Assembly (NCBI GenBank): GCA_000320545.1
Contig: ADNK01003348.1
Location: 1 to 64,000, forward strand
DNA: 64,000 nt
Direction of reading: 5' to 3'
Origin: Bigelowiella natans CCMP2755
Lineage: Eukaryota; Protista; Cercozoa
Below are positions 22,896-40,713 of the stretch, one piece after another; within the stretch, counting starts at the first letter, position 1, and every line of letters starts with the position of its first letter. Below the pieces are notes generated by a model that did no database searches, was not told the origin of the DNA, and saw nothing but the letters and a program-made list of their open reading frames with translations. The position numbers and the translations under genes are program-made.

Positions 22896-25800
22896 GTTGT
22901 GCAGGGTGCTGACAAGTCCTTGCAACGAGTGTTGTTGAGGCTCTGCTGCGTGCAAATGCCTGTCTCCCATGTGGTTCTGGCGCATGTAGTTTTGATCAAC
23001 GCTTTCTTCATTGTTCATTGTTCATTCATTGTGCATTCACATGCACAGCAGCCGTGCGGACGATGCACACGCATCAGATTGCATCGATCGCTACGATCCC
23101 TCACTGGCTAGCAAGCGATGCAATTGTGCAAATGACGTCCATGCACATGACGCTAGCCATGGTGGTCAATGATTGGAGCGCATCCAATGGATCAGCCACC
23201 AACGATGCAGCAATGGTGCTTCAGCTCACAATTGTGCACCTCCTCCACTGCCATGCACAGCAGACAATTGCAAACACACAACCCGCCAGTCATGCATGAG
23301 AACAATGGTGATGCACCACACTTCCAAAGTGCAACAAGACACTTGCAATGAACAGTGAACAATGAATGAACAAAGCATTGATCAAATCCACATGCGCCAG
23401 AACCACATGGCAGACAGGCGCACACGTGCAGCAGCGCCTCAACAAAAATCATTGCGAGGACTTGTCAGCAACCTGTTGGTGGTGAGTGGTGACACAACTA
23501 GCTGACAGCCTGCGTCCAAGGAAGCCAAAGATGACAGGTCAAGGCCAGATGAACCATCTGTCAATCATTGGTGTGGTCAGAATGTGACTAGGTTCTGACT
23601 GAAACCTGCACAGAGAAGCATCAGGAGTGGAAGCTAGGAGCATTCCGACGGGAAAAAACCAGCTTGGCGAACAGCAGCAAAATCATTGAGCAGGACAATG
23701 GTTCGACAGAAAGCCCCATCGATTTCTTTGTCAGTCGAAGGTGCACCAGATCTGGCCTCCAAGGCAATGAACAATGAACAATGATGAAAAACCACACTCC
23801 CAAAACACTTCATGACGTTTGCAACGTGCGGAACGCTGTGTTGGCTCACGCATGAAGTGAAACAAAAAGGAACCAAGAATGGCATTTTGGCCACTCCTCC
23901 GTTCCTAGTTTCATTGTCTTTTGTGCCCAATCTTTGCCAACTTCAGGACCACGCATCCCTGAATCCTGCCGTGATGGTTTGCTCACACTTGGAGATGACC
24001 AAGCAAGAGCACCACACCGCTACGAACCCCAAGCGAACAATCCCATGGACCACACCTTCATGGTCCGCTTCGCACCCACCACAACATCCCCGGCTTTTGC
24101 GGAGACATTGCCCTCGCTGGAAGGCAAGAAGATGGAGGAGGATGCATTCTTCCCACCCAGTCCACTTGGACAACGAGCTTCGCAATGACCACAATGTCCC
24201 CCGGCTTTTGCAGAGACAAAGCTCCCATCATTGCAACCAGAAGCACAAGCTTCACGCCAACCACAACGTCCCCGGCCCGACGGAGACATTGCCTGGAGGG
24301 CACAAAGTTTGAGGAGGGCACCTTCATCCTGACAGGATTCATCCGGGATGAATCTCAGTGCAGACACAGATCCGAAAATCCTTCACTTGGCAGCCAATTC
24401 GCCGATGGCCTGCCCCACCGGTGAACAGGAATGTGATGCACAGGGAAGAGGGGAAAAGCAGCCACCCTCGCAACCGAAAAATCCCCCGCCCATTGCCACT
24501 TCGGCGAATGCAACTTTGAACCTTGAACACAGATCCAAACATCCTTCATCTGGCCACCGAGTCACCGATGGCTGGGCCGACAAGTCTGTCTGTCCCATCG
24601 GTGAACAGGAATGTGGTTCAGGGATGGGAGGAAAAGCCACCCTTGTGACCGAAACCCCCCCGCCCATTGCCGCATCGCGCGCCAATTGGTCGGGTCGTCC
24701 GAAGGGGCACCCAGTGAGAATGGCAAGAACGGCAAGACTGAGCTTTTCACGTGAGGGCACAGCCGAAAAAGCACTCAAAGTGATGACATTGTCATTGGGA
24801 ACAATGAACAATGACATGGGAGACAGGCGTTTGCAAGCAGCAGAGCCTCAACAACACTCGTTGCAAGGACTTGTCAGCACCCTGTTGGTGATCAATGGCT
24901 CTGATTGCAACCAAATCGTGGAAACACGTTGCAATTGCTGCAACTGGGCCTGCAAAGTGTGCAGCCGTCAATCAGTCCGTTGGAATGGAGTCAATCAGCA
25001 AGAACAGCTGCCTCGAACTTGATTCTCAAAGGTGCCATTTCATGTGGCTTTCCCCAAAGCGCACATTGTCACAATGCATCGATTTTTTCATGTCAGACAT
25101 TGCTTCTCCCTCCGACTTTGCAAACGGTGAAGGTCAGTTTTTCCACCGGGATGCCATGGGCAAGGGGAGGTGTGCAACACGTCCGGTGCATCCACTTGGG
25201 AACCTGTTCGAGAAGCAAGTTGCTCATTCTGATTGAGTCTTTGTTGTCATGTGCGGTCCACACCTCCGCATTTCACTTTGGACATCGTGGGGAAAGCCAC
25301 AAGGAGACGATTCAGATTGGATGCAGTTGAACCTGATCAACAACCTCGAAGTCGTCAGTGATGCAAAAAAAACTGTTGCGAACTTGATTCAGTTTGGTTT
25401 TGGTCTGATCTGAGCCCTCACCAAAGCTCAGATCAGACAGAGTGGAGTTTTCAGTCCACGCATTTCCCATGGCTGAGAGGAAATGCGGAAAGTTTTTCGG
25501 GAGTGAAAACTGTTTGGGACGAATCTGTTCGAGTCAGCAATTCAATCGATCAAAGGCTTCATCCAGGAAGAATCTTCAGGTGCATGTCACACTTCGAACT
25601 TGATTCAATTTGGTTCCAGTTTGACCTGGGCTCTCCCCAAAGCTCGGACCAGACAGAGTGTGGTTTTCAGTCCACGCCTTTCCTTTGGACTTTGTGCGAT
25701 CGGCGGTTGTCATTTTTGAGTTTGTGATCGAAACACTGTGAACAACAGAAAGCGCGCAAAGTTTGTTCGGGAGTGAAAACTGCTCAGGATGAATCTGTTC

Positions 25801-26051
25801 AAGTCAGACATGCAGTCGAGTGAAGTCTTCATCCGGGAAGAATCCACAATGCAGATCCAAACATCCTTTGTTTGGCAACCAAGTCACCGGTGGCTGGGGC
25901 GACACGTCTGTCTGTCCCACCGGCAAACTGGAATGTGGTTCAGGGATGGGAGGAAAAGCCACCCTCGTGACTCAAAACCCCCCCGCCCATCACCGCATCG
26001 CGCGCCAACAGGGTGCAACTCGAGAGAAACAATGAAACAATGATGAAGAAC
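22896..26051. mobile_element. Block of degenerate nested non-autonomous DNA-transposon-like repeats, extremely TpA-depleted
   Basis: Inverted repeats beginning CAGGGTGCTGACAAG (22902-23030 vs 23347-23475, and 22902-22971 vs 24814-24884). Direct repeats of ~155 bp (24531-24685 vs 25853-26008, partial third copy ~24400-24500) and ~25379-25537 vs ~25595-25807. No recognisable transposase. Confidence 0.65.
22902..23475. mobile_element. MITE-like element with ~130 bp imperfect terminal inverted repeats
   Basis: The reverse complement of 22902-23030 aligns to 23347-23475. CAGG termini resemble hAT ends, but no clear target-site duplication was seen. Confidence 0.5.
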
Positions 26052-26307: not shown

Positions 26308-26898
26308 GTACCGAGAGAGCGGTGTCGTTAAAAGAAGTCCGCCGCCGGCCGCTCGTATTTTTTTCTCGAGTATTTTTTATCGTAATGGGTCGTCATGGTC
26401 ACTATGAACCCTAAAATAAATGGCATTTATTATAAACGACAACTAACGAACCGTTCTAGTAACAGCTGTGATTAAGAACTAATGGGTCGGCCTGTAATGG
26501 TAGCAAGACCTTCAACACCTCCCTGTCGCTATTCTGCAGCATTCAATGGCCTCACGTCCCCCCCCCCCCCCCCTCTCTCTTGCCCCTGTCCTTCTCCTAA
26601 TCCTTCCTTGTTTCTCTACAGTCTCTATCAAACTCGCCATTTACAGATAAAGGAGGTGATAATAATTAATTATTGTTGTTTTTTTGGGGGGGGAGATTAG
26701 CTTGTTAATTTATGTTCTTAGTCACTTCTTTTTCCTAACTTGTTTTCTTGTTGTCCTTGCTCCACCCTCCTCGCTAACCCTCCTCTATGAGAGACAGATA
26801 GTGGTTACAACAAAAAAGACATTTATGTATCCATGCTCATATCGTATTTAAATGCCATTCCGTTTGCGCCAGGTAGGTAAGTAGACTAGGCCTATAGG

Positions 26899-27030
26899 AT
26901 GAGGATCGCTCCCCTCTTCCTTCGCGTGCCCTCCTTCATCATGCTCCTGCTACTTCCTCAGCTTGTGGTACTTACAAAAGAATTTATCCCATCCTCTTTC
27001 CTCTCCTCCGCCTTCTTAAAGAATATTATA

Positions 27031-27067
<37 letters not shown>

Positions 27068-30000
27068 CAGGTAGGGTTGGGGGGATGGGGCGTGGTACAA
27101 GCAGTGAGCTTGGGCCGCGTGCGTATGCCTGTTTTTTGTATCACAATCCAACCAAGTGAGCTTAGCCGCGGTTCATCATGTGTGTGTATAGTGTATGTTA
27201 GTTTGTGCATGTGTGTGCACGTGAGTGTGTGCGTGTGCATTGGGAACACAAGAGGGATCACATTTATTAAATTCCAGCCATCGGATAGCCATATTTATGA
27301 TACACTTCTATTCAAAAATTTTTCTTTTGGAGACATGCTAACATCCTCGGTCTCGACTTTAACCACACCTCTCAACTGCCCTCAACCTATATCTATACAC
27401 TATGAAAAGTCCCCTACGACCCTGTTAAACGGCGCGTCGTCGTACCTTCTCAGTGAAAGCTACTCAGGGAATAACAAGTATGTGACGAGCGCGGTGGCAC
27501 GGGACGGGCGGATCTTCGCCGCTCCTTATGATGCATCGAAAGTGCTGGCGATCGACCCATCACGGAACGTCTCCTACCAGCTCAGCGAGAGCTACTCAGG
27601 GGTTGTCAAATACCAGACGAGCGCGGTGGCCTCTGACGGGAGGATCTTCGCCGCTCCTAGCAGTGCACTGAACGTGTTGGTGATCGACCCATCGCGGAAC
27701 GTCTCCTACCAGCTCAGCGAGAACTACTCAGGAAATACGAAATACCGAACGAGCGCGGTGGCCCCCGACGGGCGGATCTTCGCCGCTCCTTATTCTGCAT
27801 CGAAAGTGCTAGTGATCGATCCATCACGGAACGTCTCCTACCAGCTCAACGAGAGCTACTCAGGGGATGCCAACTACAGGGCGAGCGTGGTGGCGCGGGA
27901 CGGGCGGATCTTCGCCGCTCCTAGCAGTGCACTGAACGTGCTGGTGATCGACCCATCGCGGAACGTCTCCTACCAGCTCAGCGAGGATTACGGCTCGGGG
28001 ACTTTCAAATACTGGACGAGCGCGGTGGCCTCTGACGGGCGGATCTTCGCCGCTCCTTCCAATGCTCTGAAGGTGCTGGTGATCGACCCGCTGCGGAACG
28101 TCTCCTACCTGCTCAGCGAGGATTACGGATCGGCAACTTTCAAATATTACACGAGCGCAGTGGCACCCGATGGGCGGATCTTCGCCGCTCCTGCCAATGC
28201 ACCGTACGTGCTGGTGATCGACCCATCGCGGAACGTCTCCTACCAGCTCAGCGAGAGCTACTCAGGGTTTAGCAAATACTGGACGAGCGCGGTGGCCCCG
28301 GACGGGCGGATCTTCGTCGTTCCTCATATTAACCCGAAGGTGCTGGTGATCGACCCGCTGCGGAACGTCTCCTACCAGCTCAGCGAGGATTACGGCTTCG
28401 GATCTAGCAAATACTTTGCGAGCGCAGTGGCACCAGATGGGCGGATATTCGCCGCTCCTAATTGGGCCTCAGAAGTTCTGGTGGTCTATCCTGGGTCGTA
28501 CAGATACAGAACGCAGTCGCCGACCACCATGCCAACACATGTAAGAATAGTTGTTTATGATTCGTCTTGAAGGCTTGCGTGGCGTTATATCATCGAGTTT
28601 CTTATTTTTGTTCCTATCTCGCCTTTTATTTCCTCACTTGAGATTGGAACGTATGCGTCTGTGAAATTTCCCCTGTCCCATAAAAAGTGAGATTCATGCG
28701 ACCGTGAAAACGGGGGGGAGGGGGATGAGGCGAGTGGTAAAATGATATTTCTTTCTGTGCAGTTTCTTCTCGCCATAAATAATGTAAATTATGCACATTG
28801 CAATTCGTTGTTTCTTTTTTTCGGTGTGTGTAGGCGCCATCTACTGCCCCTACCGCTGCTCCGAGCTGCAGTCCAAGCGCAAATCCTACATCAGATCCTA
28901 CGCTAATTCCTACTTTAACTCCTACTGCAAACCCTACTTTTAGCCCAAGTCTTTCTCCATCGCTCAATCCAAGCATTTTTATTAGTGCCTCTCCGAGTGC
29001 AAGCCCGAGTTGCAATCCCAGCGCAAATCCTACATTAGATCCTACATTAATTCCTACTTTAACTCCTACTTCAACTCCTACTTTTAACCCAAGTCTTTCT
29101 CCATCGCTCAATCCAAGCATTTTTATTAGTGCCTCTCCGAGTGCAAGCCCGAGTTGCAATCCCAGCGCAAATCCTACATTAGATCCTACATTAATTCCTA
29201 CTTTAACTCCTACTTCAACTCCTACTTTTAACCCAAGTCTTTCTCCATCGCTCAATCCAAGCATTTTTATTAGTGCCTCTCCGAGTGCAAGCCCGAGCTG
29301 CAATCCCAGCGCAAATCCTACATTAGATCCTACATTATTTCCTACTTTAACTCCTACTTCAACTCCCACTTTTAACCCAAGTCTTTCTCCGAGTGCGACA
29401 CCTACCAAGTCTCCATTGCACGCTCCGACCTGTGCTCCGTCTTTGAGCCCCACGCCAATGCCTTCTTCCGAGCCCTCTTCTTGCCCTTCATCTGCTCCGT
29501 CCGTTGGTATTGATACCATCACACGCTCTCTCGAGGAGTCATGTCTAAGGATTTACGGGCCAAGCACCTTCTACGTTAGAGATGGTTTGACAGTGACGTT
29601 TTCTCTCACATGTGCGTCGCTTCGTAGCAGCGCGGCAGGGCCGCGACTATTCAGCTGGAGCTACCGTTCGCTGAATCGGTCCTCCCCTTCTCTTGTGCAT
29701 GTGCAAGATCGCCAGAGTTCATGGGCTGGAGACATCTTACAGCTCGCTGAGTCAGATATAGATTCAATATTCCGAAATGATAGTGATGTTTCAGCTGATA
29801 TGGAAGTTCAGGCGTGCGTTCGCCTCAACGTTTCGAGTCTACACTCAGAAGAACTCCGAATCTGTTCGGTGACTAACATCACCGCTCAGCGCAACCTTGC
29901 CCCTACCATCGCTTTTGAGGGCTTTGGCACTTTTGTTTCGTCTGGGAGAGAAGTCGTACTAGCTGCAAGGATCAACCACCACATAAAGTCCCCCAACATG

Positions 30001-31086
30001 AGCTTATCCTTAGATGATATCGCATCCTTTTCTTACCGGTGGACTATGCGGCGGCTTACGAATAGTCAAACTGCCCGCTCAGGCGCAGATATCAATCTCA
30101 TTGACATACCTTCATCCCGGTCGATTGCCCTTAGAATCCCAAAGTACATGTTGGAACCACAAGAAAGCTACAGAATCAGTTTCGAGGCGAACATGACCAA
30201 GGTGTACGGGATGCGTCGTGGCTTAGTGTCATTCGCGGTAATAAAGGACGGAGTATTAATACTAGTTTCTAAAGCTATGTAGGCGTCAATTATGTATGTG
30301 TGTGTGTGTGTGTGCGCGTTAGTTGTACCTTTAGTGTTATACAGCGCGTGGGTATGGGAATTTGTATGAAAGCAGTCGATTCGTTCTAATTTGAAAATGT
30401 GCCATTAGGACGTGCTAAGCACAATCGCCCGTGGCTTTGTAGCAGGCATCAACGGTCTCTCTAATTTCCAGAATATTCCAGCTGATGTAGGGCTTAATTT
30501 AGATGGGAGTTCGGCGTGTTATGACCCTGAGGACGCACCCAATAGCACTTGGATATTCCAGTGGAGCTGTATCAACCAGACGGAGGCGCATCAGATATGT
30601 TCGGGCGCTCGATTGACCCGTAACGGCGCTGTCTACGCCCTTCCATCCGAACGACTAGCGCATTCAACAATTCTGAACCTCACGCTAAACTTCTCTGTGG
30701 TTTCTAACGGAGGGACGCTGCGGCGTTCCAGCCTGTTCCATACGACTTTCCATGTCATTCCGAAGGGTTCTCCGTCTCTATTTATCACAGGAAGATCCTT
30801 CATTGTCTCTCGGGGGGGGACCCTCTCCCTAACAGCGAATTTTGATGGGGGCAATAGTACCGACACTGATTCATTAACTGAATATCGCTGGGAAATGGAG
30901 AGGAACTCGTCTTCGCCATTCATCATTGATGCCAATACGGCCTCAATCGTCTTGCCAGGGTCCCAATTAGTAGACGCTGCACGGCCACAGCAGAAGGAGG
31001 TGGCTATCACTGCTATCGCGATCCAGGGTTCTGAAAGGGCTCGGTCTACGGTGTGTACATAGCATGAACTGTTAAAACACAGACAG

Positions 31087-31123
<37 letters not shown>

Positions 31124-31133
31124 ACCCATATTA

Positions 31134-31180
<47 letters not shown>

Positions 31181-31530
31181 CATATATATAACTTGATATA
31201 TTGGAATATTACCATTTGACCATGGCTACTGAATATGATTCACTTCTACTGAACACTTTACATCTCTTTATGGGACATATCTAAGTGTGACTCCGATGAT
31301 GTCTCATTGTTACAGGTCACGGTCAGGATTATCGATGTTCTCGAAATCGGATCAATTCGAATTAGCCCCCTAGAGGGAGTTGCTTACACGTCTGAATTCA
31401 AAGCATCGGCTTCTGTGATCATCTTAGATTTGGACTACGCACCGACGCTTACGTCTTTCTCATTCTACTCTCAAAATAGCAGCCAGTCTAACCCGAAAGT
31501 TCTATGTACGTTTTCTTTGTCCCAAGGTCT

Positions 31531-31581
<51 letters not shown>

Positions 31582-32222
31582 CCGCGCTTTCGTGCTATCT
31601 CGCTTTCTTGTCTTTTTACACCCCCCCTTCTGATTTTCATACATCCAAACATGAGAAAAGGCTCTAAGTGAGAATATTCTCTTTCTACTTTCCCTCACTC
31701 TTTGTCCCCCCCTCCCCCATTCTCCCCCCCCTCCCTCGTTTTCTACACTTGTAGAGTGTACATTCTCTTTACCGGCGGGAAACCATAGTATTGTTGTCAA
31801 AGTCAAAGACAGCATAGGCGGCGTTTCGGAGGCGATATTTGGCCCTATCCAAGTTCATGCTGCAGCATTTCCAGTTTCCGATACGCAGAGCGCAGAATGC
31901 GTCCAAGCATCCCAGGCAGTGTCCACCCTCCGCAAGATGACCGAGGGCAGTTTTCCATCCATTCGTGATGATAGCCTAGTTACCGGAGACAGGCCAGCGT
32001 CGGTGTGTAGGAGCCTCAATCTGACGCTCAATGTACTTAACAGCCTCGAAGAGATAAGCGGCGTGTTGAATCTCGCTCGGATGGCTTTGGAGATTATAGA
32101 TTCCATTCCGGTTGACCACACTCTGCTTTCGCAATGTGTGGACTATGCCGGAGCATTGGGATCGAATACAGCAACATCTGGAGGATCAAAAGGGTAATAA
32201 CTTCAATTGCAATCTGATATAA

Positions 32223-32264
<42 letters not shown>

Positions 32265-32750
32265 TTAAATGTATTTGTAGTGTGTACGGCTCTGACACGT
32301 GAAATAAAATCTGAATAATCTGAACGGCCTTTTGTCTTTCGGGCTCTTTCTGATGAAAATCTGAGACGAATTCATCATTCCGCCTCAACTCTGACAAAGT
32401 TGATCTTTTCTGTTACATAGGTGCTCTAGCGATGCGCCCTTGTCTTTGCTTTCATCAGATCTATGGGACATCGTAAGCAGCTATGTGGAGAGACTTGCAT
32501 TGGTTACTGACATTGCAGCAGGAGAAGAGAGTCTCATGGTGGCTCAAGTTATCAGGGAATCGGTTGAAACTCAATCCTTTAAAGGTAGGGGATGAGAAAG
32601 ACGCAGTGGCGTCGCAACTAGCTGCATTATGCATGCGTGTAGACAAGCGAGCTCTACACAATTTCTCTCTGTCTTTCAGATACATAGCTGTTTTTTGTAT
32701 GGCGGCACCCACCTATCCACCTACCCACGCACGCAGAGTAATAGAGAAAG

Positions 32751-32792
<42 letters not shown>

Positions 32793-34007
32793 ACATGCGT
32801 AAAGAAGTGGGGATAACGGATAGAATCATTTGTGTTTCAAATTCAAAATAACAAAACACTCCTTGATACAATTGAAAGATGGAGTAAAGAACATCGTCCA
32901 AGTGAAGCACGTACTCGATGCAGTAGACTCAATCACAGCCAACGCAGAACCGTCAGAACTCGCAGCGGATCTAGGCAACACGCTTGCTGATTCGTACGGA
33001 GCGATTTTAATGAAGTCCGGCTCAGCATCAAATCATCCCGCGTCATTGGAATTAACATCTTGCTCTATCGAGGACCAGTTGGTAAGTTCCATGGACTCTC
33101 TCCTTCACAAGGCGGGGAAAACTTCCCCCCCCCAGTCTAATGCCGGTGAAATTCAGTTCAGAACATCCAGTTTTAATGCGACCGCTGGTAGCATCTTTGC
33201 CGATGAAGTTAGTAGTTCCAGTGCATCTTCCGGGCTACGCGTCTCTATTTCCCCGACAACGGCGAAGTCCTCCATAAGTAGATATGAGCGACCGACGAAT
33301 ATCCTTACTCTTCTACAACTATCGGCTGAATTAATCGCCCAATGCCGACAGCGCCAGATACAGCAACAGGCGCTAGCGAATACCATCAATGCAGTGTTGG
33401 CATCTGATGTAGCCTCGGTCAACTTCTACAAATCCTCTGGCGCTCGACTGCTGTCTCGTGGTTCTAGCGACCACGGTCCGCGCGCAAACATTACCATAGC
33501 TCTTCGCTCAGAGGTCGCGACGACGGACTGCGGAGTTCGAAGAGTTTGCAGCTTTTGGGACGCCTCTCTGCGGGTATGGAGGCAAGATGGATGCGCATAC
33601 AACGGAACAGACCTGGATGGACTGCACACCTGCGCCTGCAACCACCTCACTGAGTTCGCAGTACTGGCGGACCGAAGGAGTTGTTCCCCCGAGGAGAATG
33701 AGGTCAAACTAGGGTACTGGGGGCTGGTAGGCTTGCTTCTAGTCATTGCATTAGCGGCCTTTGTACAGCTAGCCAGACTTGCCCAAACTGGTTTCAAGAA
33801 GAAGAACGTAGCCTGGACCCATTTCTTTGTCCTAGCTGTGGCTATTACCAGAGCTATCAGCGTATTGATGGTAAGTGAAAGCCGAAGAGTGATGCGCTCG
33901 CTTGTTAACAGTATCATGTACCGATATGCTGGATGATTCGATTTTTAACAGGCAAAGCATGCATTGATTCCTCCCTTCTCACTTCCTGTATCTCAGCCCC
34001 CTCCCCT

Positions 34008-34063
<56 letters not shown>

Positions 34064-34263
34064 TGTGCCTCTTTTTCTCCCCGTCCCTCCCACACGCATA
34101 CTCTCTCTACTTCTCTGTATATTGGTATATATGTATGTCTAGGTGGTTGCAGGGGAGGGGGGGGGGAGGGGGAGAGGGGTTATAGTATTTTGGGGAAAAG
34201 TTTTTATGCTTTAGAACAAAAACACTGGTCGCGTAATGCAATAATACGGGCGCATACGCACAC

Positions 34264-34307
<44 letters not shown>

Positions 34308-35477
34308 GTTGCCGAGTTGATCTCAAATTTCGAGCAGATTCGTATGCACAACGGCGTTACAGTGGCTCTACTAGCGCTGCCTTATATCTTCCATTACTAC
34401 CTTTACACCCTGATTATGTTCCAATGGGCTTGTATGGTACACAACTCACGACTTTCGAAAAACCCGTTCGAAAACTTCAAGAAGCGTTACAGGGCGACAG
34501 CCACCTCTATGGGGGGGGGGGTGGTTGTGGTCGGGGTTCTGTTTTATGCAATAAATCTCCGGCCGTGGATAATAGCAAGCGCCATCGTTGGGATTTCTTT
34601 CGCACTTATGTTTGGTTTCTTCGTATACGGAATGAGGCTTTCATCAATGGTGCTAGAGAAGCTGAATGACATGCGAAAGGCTCAGAGATTCGAGCGAATG
34701 GTTTACTGGGTTACAGGTTCTATGTTTCTCAGCTGTTGCTGCAACATAATAATGCTCGCTGGAAGGGAGATATACATATTATTCCTATTCTCTCTCTGTT
34801 CGGACGTGTCCAGCCTTACTGCAGTTCTCTACATGTTTAAAGACAACGTGAGTAAGTTAGCCGGAAATTCTGCCAAAAGTAGTTCCAGCAGAGCCACGGA
34901 GAGGAGGGGGGGTTCTCACCTCAATGGTAAGAGATCTGGCCCTCTTAACCGAGAGTCGAATCCTATGGGGCATGTTAGTAGTAGACATCGAGTACAAATG
35001 TCAATCAGCCATACGAGAAATTCCACTATGGCTTACACGAGAGGTAGGATCGTGTCGATGGACCAACAGCGAGGAAGACTCGTATCAACAGATCAGCCAC
35101 GTCAGCGTTCCTGCATGCTAAACCAATCGGGATCAGCATCAAGGTCGGCAAGTAAGGTAGGCTCAAGCATAGCATCAGATAATCAGGGATTGGAGATGTC
35201 TACTTCGTCTACTTCTAGGAAGGGATCGGAAGCGAAGCGAAGATTAACAAACATCGGCTCCAATGCTAGCATTACAAGATTTCGTATCTCTTCTCCTTCC
35301 CCCACCAGAATGCGTGGAAGGCACACGTGGCATCTTCGCAGCTCGGAAATCGCGATTCCGGAAATCGCGATTCAATCTAGTGGCGTTCCAAGTGGAAGCC
35401 GGTTGGTCAAGAAAAAGACGCCCCTTCATAAAAGTGAAGCTGAACCAGAGGAACAGTGGAAAAACTATGCTATCTAG
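26899..35477 (+). CDS. Adhesion-GPCR/polycystin-like receptor: signal peptide, 8-repeat beta-propeller, P/T/S mucin stalk, REJ-like region, GAIN/GPS, 7TM, Ser/Arg-rich tail
   Basis: N-terminal MRIAPLFLRVPSFIMLLLLPQLV. Eight 44-45 aa repeats in 27440-28492. PT stalk 28834-29505. REJ motifs LDGSSACYDPED..FQWSC (~30500-30570), ISPLEGVAYTSEF and LPAGNHSIVVKVKDSIGG. GPS CSFWD..WRQDGC..TCACNHL|TEFAVL (33547-33666). Seven hydrophobic segments across exons ~33715-33870 and 34308-34840; stop TAG ends at 35477. Confidence 0.85.
27440..28492 (+). repeat. Coding tandem repeat, 8 units of 132/135 bp (beta-propeller blades)
   Basis: Consensus SYQLSESYSGxxKYxTSAVAxDGRIFAAPxxAxxVLVIDPSRNV. An NVS glycosylation sequon spans each inter-repeat junction. 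Confidence 0.95.
28862..29395 (+). repeat. Coding tandem repeat, ~3.7 units of 144 bp (48 aa mucin-like stalk)
   Basis: AAGCATTTTTATTAGTGCC recurs at 28971, 29115 and 29259 (period 144). Translates as P-S/T-x-x tetrapeptides on the + strand. Confidence 0.9.
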
Positions 35478-38888: not shown

Positions 38889-39339
38889 CGCCCCGGAGCT
38901 CGAAAGAAATATCGGAGAAAAGTCTTATCTGCGACATGAAAATATCCTTGTCGCACCTTAAACATCCAATCGAATATCATCGTGATTTTCCGGTTTGTCG
39001 GGAGAGCTTTTTATTCCGGTTGGGTACTCGTCGCAGAAGGTCGACCGGCTGTGCGCGACAAATAATCCCCGGCGAGCCCGTCGAGTTTGTCGCCGCTAAT
39101 TTCCTTCATCTTCTTAGATGTATCCCGCATGGAAAAAAAACTAAAAGCAAAGGTAAGGGAACGGTGACGTAAGCTCAGCCGCCCCCTCTCCCGCGATTTA
39201 AACCGACCGTTGTACCTAACAAGGACGGGGGTTCAGAGCACTGGTGTTTGGCTGGCACAAAGAGTAGCGGAGTGCGTAATTCAACTAGGAGGAAAAGGTG
39301 TCACTCGCCACCCCCCCCCCTTCATTCCACCCCTCCCAA

Positions 39340-40713
39340 ATGGCTCCCCGTTCGCAAAAGAAGAGGGTGATATTTCTGCATCCCGACCTCGGACTTGGAG
39401 GAGCGGAAACTCTCATCGTGAAAGCGGCGCAGGCTTTGAAGGAGAAAGGGCACAATGTCACTATCTACACGTCTTACTACAACCCCGAGCGCTGTATCCA
39501 GGCGTCGAAGGAGCTCGACGTGCGCGTGGCAGGAGACTGGATTCCACGGAAGTTTCTCGGGCAATTCCATATCGTGTTCGCGCTGTTGAGGGCTTTCTGG
39601 CTGTCCCTCTTCGTGGCCTTTTGGCACAGCCCGGACGTCTGGATTACTGACCAGATTGCGGCGTACAATCTCGTCCTGTGGGCGCTCAGCTCAAAGCCGA
39701 TCGTGTTTTACTGCCACTTTCCTGACCAGCTCCTGACGCAGAGGAAGACGCTCTTGAAACGGTTATATCGATTACCTTTCGACCTCCTGGAGCAGTCTGG
39801 TACTGCGGCGGCAGATACCATACTAGTGAACTCAGCGTTTACTGCAAATGTATTTAAGGCCACGTTCCGATTCCTCGGAGGGCGACAACTCCAAATCCTT
39901 TATCCGTCCGTTAGCATTCCTACGCAGCACTCTTTGATGACGGCTGGAGCTTCAGTGGGAAAGGACCTAAAAGGGACTATCATATTCCTATCTATCAACA
40001 GGTTTGAACGCAAGAAAAACCTTGCTCTTGCAATACATGCTTTCTCCGAGTTTCTCAAACTTCTCGCTGCTGAGAGGGAGAGCAATGCCGGTTTGAAGGG
40101 CAATAAAACATCACATGAAATGGCTGATGAGAGGAAAACCGCACCGCCCGCAAAGCTCATTCTCGCAGGTGGATACGACGTAAGAGTGCAGGAAAACGTC
40201 GAGTATTTCGCTGAGTTGGAAAAGCTGGCCTATGAGGAGTATAAATTCAGTAAAAAACAGGTCGAATTTATCCGATCGTTCGAGGATGCCAAGAAAAGGG
40301 AGCTTCTGGTCAATGCATCTTGTGTGCTCTACACCCCCGAGAACGAGCATTTTGGAATTGTTCCGATTGAGGCCATGGCTCACGGCACACCGGTGATTGC
40401 GAGTGATAGCGGGGGGCCGAAGGAAAGCATTGAAAGCAATGTGACGGGATTCCTCTGTAAGCATGACTCTGTTTCTCAGTGGGCTAGGCGACTCCTTAGT
40501 TTTGCGGAGAATCAGAATGTCGCAAAGAAAATGGGGAGAGCAGGCAGGTCTAGGGTAGAGAAAATGTTCTCATTCAAGAGCTTCCAGAAACAGCTCCACG
40601 ACACAATCTTAGCTGCCAAGGCTAGAAGAGGGCTTCTTGCGCGGCTTATTCTCGGTTCAGTCTGTGTCGTTCTTGTCGGGATGCTGATACTTATGTGCTT
40701 CTCCGGAAATTAA
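39340..40713 (+). CDS. ALG2: Alpha-1,3/1,6-mannosyltransferase ALG2 (GT4), intronless
   Basis: FLHPDLGLGGAE, FYCHFPDQLL, YRLPFD, LSINRFERKKNLALAI, AGGYDVRVQENVEY, LYTPENEHFGIVPIEAM. Confidence 0.95.
   Translation: MAPRSQKKRVIFLHPDLGLGGAETLIVKAAQALKEKGHNVTIYTSYYNPERCIQASKELDVRVAGDWIPRKFLGQFHIVFALLRAFWLSLFVAFWHSPDVWITDQIAAYNLVLWALSSKPIVFYCHFPDQLLTQRKTLLKRLYRLPFDLLEQSGTAAADTILVNSAFTANVFKATFRFLGGRQLQILYPSVSIPTQHSLMTAGASVGKDLKGTIIFLSINRFERKKNLALAIHAFSEFLKLLAAERESNAGLKGNKTSHEMADERKTAPPAKLILAGGYDVRVQENVEYFAELEKLAYEEYKFSKKQVEFIRSFEDAKKRELLVNASCVLYTPENEHFGIVPIEAMAHGTPVIASDSGGPKESIESNVTGFLCKHDSVSQWARRLLSFAENQNVAKKMGRAGRSRVEKMFSFKSFQKQLHDTILAAKARRGLLARLILGSVCVVLVGMLILMCFSGN

What the first reader, a model, noticed from the sequence alone, without database searches (positions are those of the whole stretch)
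27440..28492. Hypervariable, concertedly evolving beta-propeller at the tip of a surface receptor
Seen: eight repeats are nearly identical, even at synonymous sites, but differ at two patches: G-xx-KY-x (NN/V, VV/Q, NT/R, DA/R, TF/W, TF/Y, FS/W, SS/F) and P-xx (YD, SS, YS, SS, SN, AN, HI, NW). Repeats are mosaics: the 3' halves of 1 and 3 match, as do 2 and 4, and 5 and 7, while a GAGGATTACGG 5' variant is shared by 5, 6 and 8. Established: Podospora HNWD (het-d/het-e) WD40 repeats combine concerted evolution with a few hypervariable surface codons for non-self recognition. Inference: a diversifying extracellular recognition module (pathogen, prey or allorecognition) coupled to a 7TM signalling unit, i.e. 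a candidate protist immune-type receptor family.
Basis: partly seen in the sequence, partly recalled or inferred. Interest (0 to 1): 0.82.

Follow-up and report, generated by a model that had tools for sequence, protein, structure and literature searches.

The report
Diversifying propeller tip on protist receptor
A marine alga-amoeba builds surface receptors whose outer tip is an eight-bladed propeller with five fast-changing positions per blade, all predicted on one face, and such tips appear to be swapped between receptor bodies, much as fungal non-self receptors diversify but here outside the cell.

Summary
Largely confirmed. The genome is Bigelowiella natans. Window 27410-28540 is one exon folding as a closed 8-blade beta-propeller (pLDDT 96.5), on a signal peptide / PT stalk / REJ / GPS (H-L|T) / 7TM gene. 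'Nearly identical' is overstated: the repeats average 79% nucleotide identity, but they are mosaic (permutation p 5e-4). The signal recurs in two paralogues, exceeds 120 gene-conversion null simulations, and third codon positions vary only at the neutral level. The sites lie in the d-a and b-c loops, as in Podospora HNWD. New here: the same five positions vary in 41 other proteins of this unnamed repeat family, including phage tail-fibre ends; variants of an environmental propeller-REJ-GPS receptor show 18 replacement:1 silent change in the propeller against 12:15 elsewhere; and this gene's 5' half matches one receptor family while its 3' half matches another carrying different tips. It works like HNWD but is not an NLR; the 7TM is weakly TOM1/GPR137-like, not adhesion-class. 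Ligand, expression and strain variation are untested. The scan noted paralogues earlier (s1-724786, s1-727071).

The parts
26899..26967 (+). Exon 1: 23-codon hydrophobic leader, probable signal peptide, phase-0 donor
   Evidence: the C504 paralogue keeps it with in-frame 9- and 6-nt indels
27410..28540 (+). Exon 2 (phase 0/0): closed 8-blade beta-propeller of 44/45-aa repeats; N-V-S sequon at the start of strand d in seven repeats
   Evidence: pLDDT 96.5, pTM 0.92; Cake8 TM 0.75
27470..27484 (+). Variable patch 1 of repeat 1 (two codons in the d-a loop, one at the start of strand a); same place in every repeat
27527..27532 (+). Variable patch 2 of repeat 1 (two codons in the b-c loop); same place in every repeat
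28541..28833 (+). Intron homologous to the post-propeller intron of C1285 and C504
28834..29520 (+). Pro/Ser/Thr stalk (144-nt unit x3.7 at 28861-29390); similarity switches from C504/C1285 to C3538 at about 28862
   Evidence: (PF04886 E 4e-12)
29500..32194 (+). REJ/PKD-like exons (internal boundaries approximate)
   Evidence: Exon pieces match REJ-bearing P0035 at E 9e-11, 9e-16, 1e-8; no direct Pfam REJ hit
32860..33870 (+). GAIN-like region, GPS motif 33544-33666 with H-L|T at 33643-33651 and Stachel-like TEFAVL, then TM1-2 (5' boundary approximate)
   Evidence: (PF01825 E 1e-9)
34308..35477 (+). Last exon: TM3-7 and a Ser/Arg-rich cytoplasmic tail of about 210 aa
   Evidence: (PF06454 E 1.5e-4, below cut-off)

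Best explanation
An autoproteolytic 7TM surface receptor with a ligand-binding propeller tip under diversifying selection. Shown: the tip is an 8-blade propeller; five codons per blade in the d-a and b-c loops evolve faster than neutral; short tracts are exchanged between repeats; tips and bodies of paralogues have discordant similarity. Inferred: conversion keeps the scaffold alike and reshuffles loop variants, selection keeps new top-face combinations, and recombination in the PT stalk moves whole tips between receptor bodies. The face binds a changing biotic surface (prey bacterium, virus or parasite); pull on the stalk acts through the self-cleaved GAIN/GPS and its Stachel-like peptide on the 7TM, which signals through the genome's many G-alpha proteins.
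For: M2a vs M1a 2dL 26, p 2e-6, omega 6.5, sites 9, 10, 13, 28, 29; B504 p 1e-3 and C1285 p 1e-3 with overlapping sites; each half separately significant; 0 of 120 conversion nulls reach 24.5; diversity 0.71 at codon positions 1-2 against 0.38 at position 3 and 0.36 at fourfold framework sites; loop positions match the HNWD sites in PMC1805685; 18N:1S against 12N:15S in variants of an environmental relative, Fisher p 4e-4; the same domain ends phage tail-fibre proteins; GPS and 7 helices; 96 G-alpha exon matches.
Against: No strain data for this locus. Conversion inflates the site test (8-12% false positives at nominal 5%), and the codon models are my own implementation with fixed tree shape. 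Paralogue C504-A shows no significant selection (p 0.13-0.26). Same-face placement rests on strand order, not measured coordinates. The 7TM is not a known G-protein-coupled class.
Confidence: 0.58

Rival explanations
1. One-off adaptive sculpting: after amplification from one blade, selection made the blades different to build an asymmetric site for a fixed ligand (glycan, protein or small cue). Each paralogue then stays fixed; there is no ongoing arms race.
For: Between-repeat omega above 1 is also expected here; the pattern is family-wide, in 41 proteins; older paralogues C1395 and C3203 have diverged repeats; environmental clusters P0094 and P0114 show few differences (1 and 8).
Against: Loop-focused replacement polymorphism among P0052 variants; close paralogues carry different loop sets; identical tracts of 35-50 nt show recent exchange.
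Confidence: 0.22
2. Mate or kin recognition receptor: the variable face reads a conspecific surface protein, as proposed for the REJ-GPS-6/7TM gamete protein of Ectocarpus.
For: PMC4700764 reports a male-gamete REJ/GPS/6-7TM protein with positively selected extracellular sites; HNWD genes act in allorecognition.
Against: At least 58 GPS matches in the genome with unrelated tips suggest a broad sensing repertoire; the domain's other common home is phage tail ends; no linked partner gene was seen (next gene is a glycosyltransferase).
Confidence: 0.14
3. Neutral or artefactual: exposed loops are merely unconstrained, conversion biases the test, or the 5'/3' discordance is an assembly chimera.
For: Variable residues are in loops; conversion inflates site tests; no read support obtained.
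Against: Positions 1-2 vary at twice the neutral level while position 3 does not; opposite-face loops are invariant; both halves are only 72-78% like their nearest paralogues, so neither is a misplaced copy; unspliced propeller-REJ-7TM genes exist elsewhere (P0114, P0094).
Confidence: 0.06

Closest known systems
Podospora HNWD NLRs (het-d, het-e), PMC1805685
   Same: Propeller repeats exchanged within and between genes; a few codons per repeat under positive selection, in the d-a and b-c loops of the top face.
   Different: Not WD40, no NACHT, extracellular; five sites rather than four; repeats 79% alike rather than up to 100%; no RIP-like supply (propeller TpA o/e 0.92).
Adhesion GPCRs (GAIN-7TM), PMC12716839
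   Same: Variable N-terminal domains, stalk, GPS with H-L|T, Stachel-like TEFAVL against consensus TxFAVLM, seven helices.
   Different: 7TM has no 7tm_2 match and is weakly TOM1/GPR137-like; a REJ module is present; the host is a rhizarian, whereas that paper calls the GAIN/7TM link restricted to holozoans.
Polycystin-1 / REJ proteins, and Ectocarpus Esi0130_0068 (PMC4700764)
   Same: REJ plus GPS before the membrane part; the Ectocarpus protein has 6-7 TM and extracellular positive selection, so this chassis outside holozoans has a precedent.
   Different: No PLAT or channel module here; selection is focused on a repeat propeller tip, not on REJ.
Ectocarpus ROCO-LRR and NB-ARC-TPR candidate immune receptors (PMC3341825)
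   Same: Non-opisthokont repeat receptors with shuffling and diversifying selection.
   Different: There each repeat is an exon and the proteins have intracellular architectures; here the whole propeller is one exon on a membrane receptor.
Unnamed propeller at phage tail-fibre C-termini (P0056, P0110; Atlas Uroviricota clusters)
   Same: Same repeat, high internal identity, same five variable positions.
   Different: Displayed on virions, not on a signalling receptor; binding has not been shown for them either.

Membership tests
HNWD/NWD NLR | NACHT domain | tested here: not met
   No hit in the exon-wise Pfam scan
HNWD/NWD NLR | WD40 repeats | tested here: not met
   No WD40 family hit; fold is a propeller of another repeat type
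HNWD/NWD NLR | Positive selection at d-a and b-c loop codons | tested here: met
HNWD/NWD NLR | Concerted evolution of repeats | tested here: inconclusive
   Mosaic tracts p 5e-4, within-gene above between-gene identity p 0.004, no positional orthology of inner repeats; but only C504-A repeats form a clade
HNWD/NWD NLR | Allele and repeat-number polymorphism with a recognition phenotype | not testable with these tools
Adhesion GPCR | GPS motif with H-X-S/T site and tethered-agonist consensus | tested here: met
   PF01825 E 1e-9; H-L|T-E-F-A-V-L
Adhesion GPCR | Full GAIN fold | tested here: inconclusive
   Family profile hits ADGRG6 at E 2e-11 over positions 14-424; the model of relative P0114 is low-confidence there
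Adhesion GPCR | Class B2 7TM (7tm_2) | tested here: not met
   No 7tm_2 hit; PF06454 E 1.5e-4 here and 35 bits, over cut-off, in relative P0191; fold searches show only a generic 7-helix bundle
Adhesion GPCR | Autoproteolysis and G-protein coupling | not testable with these tools
   G-alpha genes are present; coupling needs experiment
Polycystin-1 | REJ before GPS | tested here: met
   By homology to P0035, which carries PF02010
Polycystin-1 | 11 TM with PLAT and channel module | tested here: not met
   Seven helices, then tail and stop
Diversity-generating retroelement target | Adenine-specific variation from a template | tested here: not met
   All four bases are common at variable positions, A about 31%; framework adenines are conserved; no genome-wide template search was made

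The most novel reading that the evidence does not exclude
A combinatorial recognition repertoire in a rhizarian: dozens of GPS receptors take interchangeable binding tips (this propeller, a LamG-like domain, RCC1-like and others, two resembling phage virion modules), with HNWD-style diversification inside the tip and an independently assembled adhesion-GPCR logic on a GPR137-like 7TM, used in ongoing conflict with viruses, parasites or prey.
Probability: 0.25. Interest if true: 0.88.

Novelty: new variant of a known kind. Interest (0 to 1): 0.72.

Why it matters
How single-celled eukaryotes recognise prey, viruses and parasites is largely open, and candidate receptors outside animals, plants, fungi and brown algae are few. 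This gives a concrete candidate in a cultured species with five named positions per blade to mutate. It shows HNWD-type diversification on an extracellular 7TM receptor, points to an unnamed family of about 4,000 propeller proteins sharing one variable face, and is a counter-example to the statement that GAIN-plus-7TM receptors with complex ectodomains are holozoan only.

Tried and rejected
Pfam, PHROGs and PDB sequence searches name no family for the repeat. One search was out of register and is replaced. The first null simulation was too divergent and was redone. The GAIN part of the P0114 model is unreliable and gave no Foldseek hit under E 0.001. Rejected: DGR-type mutagenesis; TpA mutator as the source of variation (0 of 46 framework TpA cells vary); local mutation hot spot. 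The organisms behind P0052, P0094 and P0114 were not identified; a neighbour of P0094 is only 43-63% like its Bigelowiella counterpart. Paper searches found no description of this family.

Full report
Setting. The genome is 91.4 Mb in 3736 contigs. Two database proteins labelled jgi/Bigna1 match its loci: P0034 is 100% identical to an ORF on contig C417 and P0002 shares sequence with C2121. It is therefore Bigelowiella natans, a chlorarachniophyte (name expansion from my own knowledge). The finding lies in exon 2 (27410-28540, phase 0/0) of a gene running 26899-35477: hydrophobic leader, propeller, PT stalk, REJ-like exons, GPS, seven hydrophobic helices (two before and five after the last intron) and a cytoplasmic tail. 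The two membrane exons abut without gap when aligned to unspliced relatives.

Observation. Eight repeats and all listed variable residues are present. Mean repeat identity is 79%, 85% in the framework, with framework pS 0.30, so 'nearly identical' is too strong. Mosaicism is real: identical tracts reach 50 nt and a permutation test gives p 5e-4, or 0.01 on silent sites. Inner repeats show no positional orthology with paralogue C504-B (0.828 against 0.827) and are slightly more alike within genes than between (p 0.004). In the tree, repeats of this gene mix with those of C504-B and C1285, with weak support; only C504-A repeats form a clade (bootstrap 100). Concerted evolution here is partial, and exchange between genes cannot be told from recent common origin.

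Structure. AlphaFold gives a confident model (pLDDT 96.5) whose best match is the designed 8-blade propeller Cake8 (TM 0.75). The N-terminal strand completes blade 8. The variable residues fall in the d-a loop, at the start of strand a, and in the b-c loop. By established propeller geometry these form the top face, the same elements reported for HET-E (PMC1805685).

Selection. C504-B and C1285 are independently significant with overlapping sites; C504-A is not. Each half, on its own tree, stays significant. Neutral simulations with gene conversion at similar identity raise false positives to 8-12%, but none of 120 reaches the observed 24.5; the maximum is 19.9. A tree-free control agrees: diversity at positions 1-2 of the five codons is 0.71, at their third positions 0.38, at fourfold framework sites 0.36. 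This excludes a simple mutation hot spot. There is no adenine bias and no TpA loss in the exon.

Family in the genome. Related propeller exons occur on at least eight other contigs and the GPS motif has at least 58 matches. Window 26605-28862 (leader, introns, propeller) is 72-78% like C504 and C1285 in its exons and best blocks (post-propeller intron 58-80%), but those genes continue into a different, polycystin-like body. From about 28862 on, the window is 72-75% like C3538, introns included, whose tip is a LamG-like domain. Other relatives of this body carry an RCC1-like tip (C1983), a small cysteine-rich tip (C1406) or an NHL-like-looking tip (C1923; my reading, no family hit). The switch lies in the PT stalk. 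In C504 and C1285 an intron-domain-intron-PT unit is repeated, with two propellers in C504 and a propeller plus an apparently different domain in C1285. Tip exchange through PT linkers is the simplest reading; its direction was not tested.

Outside the genome. The repeat has 3988 cluster representatives and no clear Pfam family. In 41 proteins with high internal identity, the same five positions are the most variable (0.74-0.87, next highest 0.57). Several have tail-fibre N-termini with the propeller at the C-terminal end, and the nearest Atlas clusters are mostly phage. Unspliced genes with propeller, REJ and a GPS-7TM of this family (P0114; P0094 with a degenerate GPS) or a polycystin-like body (P0052) occur in metagenome assemblies of unidentified eukaryotes. 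Five variants of P0052 differ by 18 replacement and 1 silent codon in the propeller against 12 and 15 elsewhere (Fisher p 4e-4), almost all in the same loops by my reading. These are consensus contigs, may be alleles or sibling species, and one variant supplies most differences.

Membrane part. The GPS has the canonical H-L|T and a TEFAVL segment like the TxFAVLM consensus (PMC12716839). The family profile hits adhesion GPCR chains, mainly through the GPS region. The 7TM has no 7tm_2 hit but a weak TOM1/THH1 hit, above cut-off in relative P0191; the model of P0114 has seven helices matching 7-helix bundles generically. PMC12716839 states that the GAIN-7TM link is restricted to holozoan adhesion GPCRs; PMC4700764 already describes a REJ-GPS-6/7TM protein in Ectocarpus, so the chassis is unusual but not without precedent. 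B. natans has expanded G-alpha genes (PMC3971589).

Verdict. It works like HNWD in how it diversifies and like an adhesion GPCR in how it probably signals, and belongs to neither family. The best reading is a diversifying recognition tip for a changing biotic ligand (0.58); fixed-ligand sculpting (0.22), mate or kin recognition (0.14) and artefact (0.06) remain. New variant of a known kind; interest 0.72.

Noticed in passing
window 22900-26050: Dispersed repeat almost free of TpA (o/e 0.05, CA and TG in excess); at least four other full-length copies at about 91%, one upstream of the C504 propeller gene in the same orientation.
   Followed up: partly
L022 4066-7319 (C504 12065-15318): Two propeller exons in tandem, each apparently phase 0/0 and followed by a PT mini-exon; exon A is strongly homogenised (95% framework identity), exon B is diversified. 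Could be joint or alternative exons.
   Followed up: partly
L024 7594-8133 (C1285): A different Cys-containing domain with no Pfam hit sits in the second cassette slot behind the same intron type; its 3' splice site was not resolved.
   Followed up: partly
L027 6829-8193 (C218): Divergent propeller with near-identical b-c loops but variable d-a loops, followed by a PT stalk and one hydrophobic helix, apparently a single-pass protein.
   Followed up: no
L029 5772-7220 (C771): ORF ending in highly similar SEL1-like 36-aa repeats (my reading), another internally conserved repeat array.
   Followed up: no
window 39298-40713: Intronless group-1 glycosyltransferase (PF00534 E 2e-31), ALG2-like by my reading; next gene downstream.
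   Followed up: no
P0056, P0110 and other hits: Unnamed propeller repeat family at the C-terminal end of phage tail-fibre-like proteins and in bacterial lipoprotein-like proteins, with the same five variable positions; candidate receptor-binding module.
   Followed up: partly
L033 102-830 (C3538): The LamG-like tip of the closest body paralogue also has mostly phage clusters as nearest look-alikes.
   Followed up: partly
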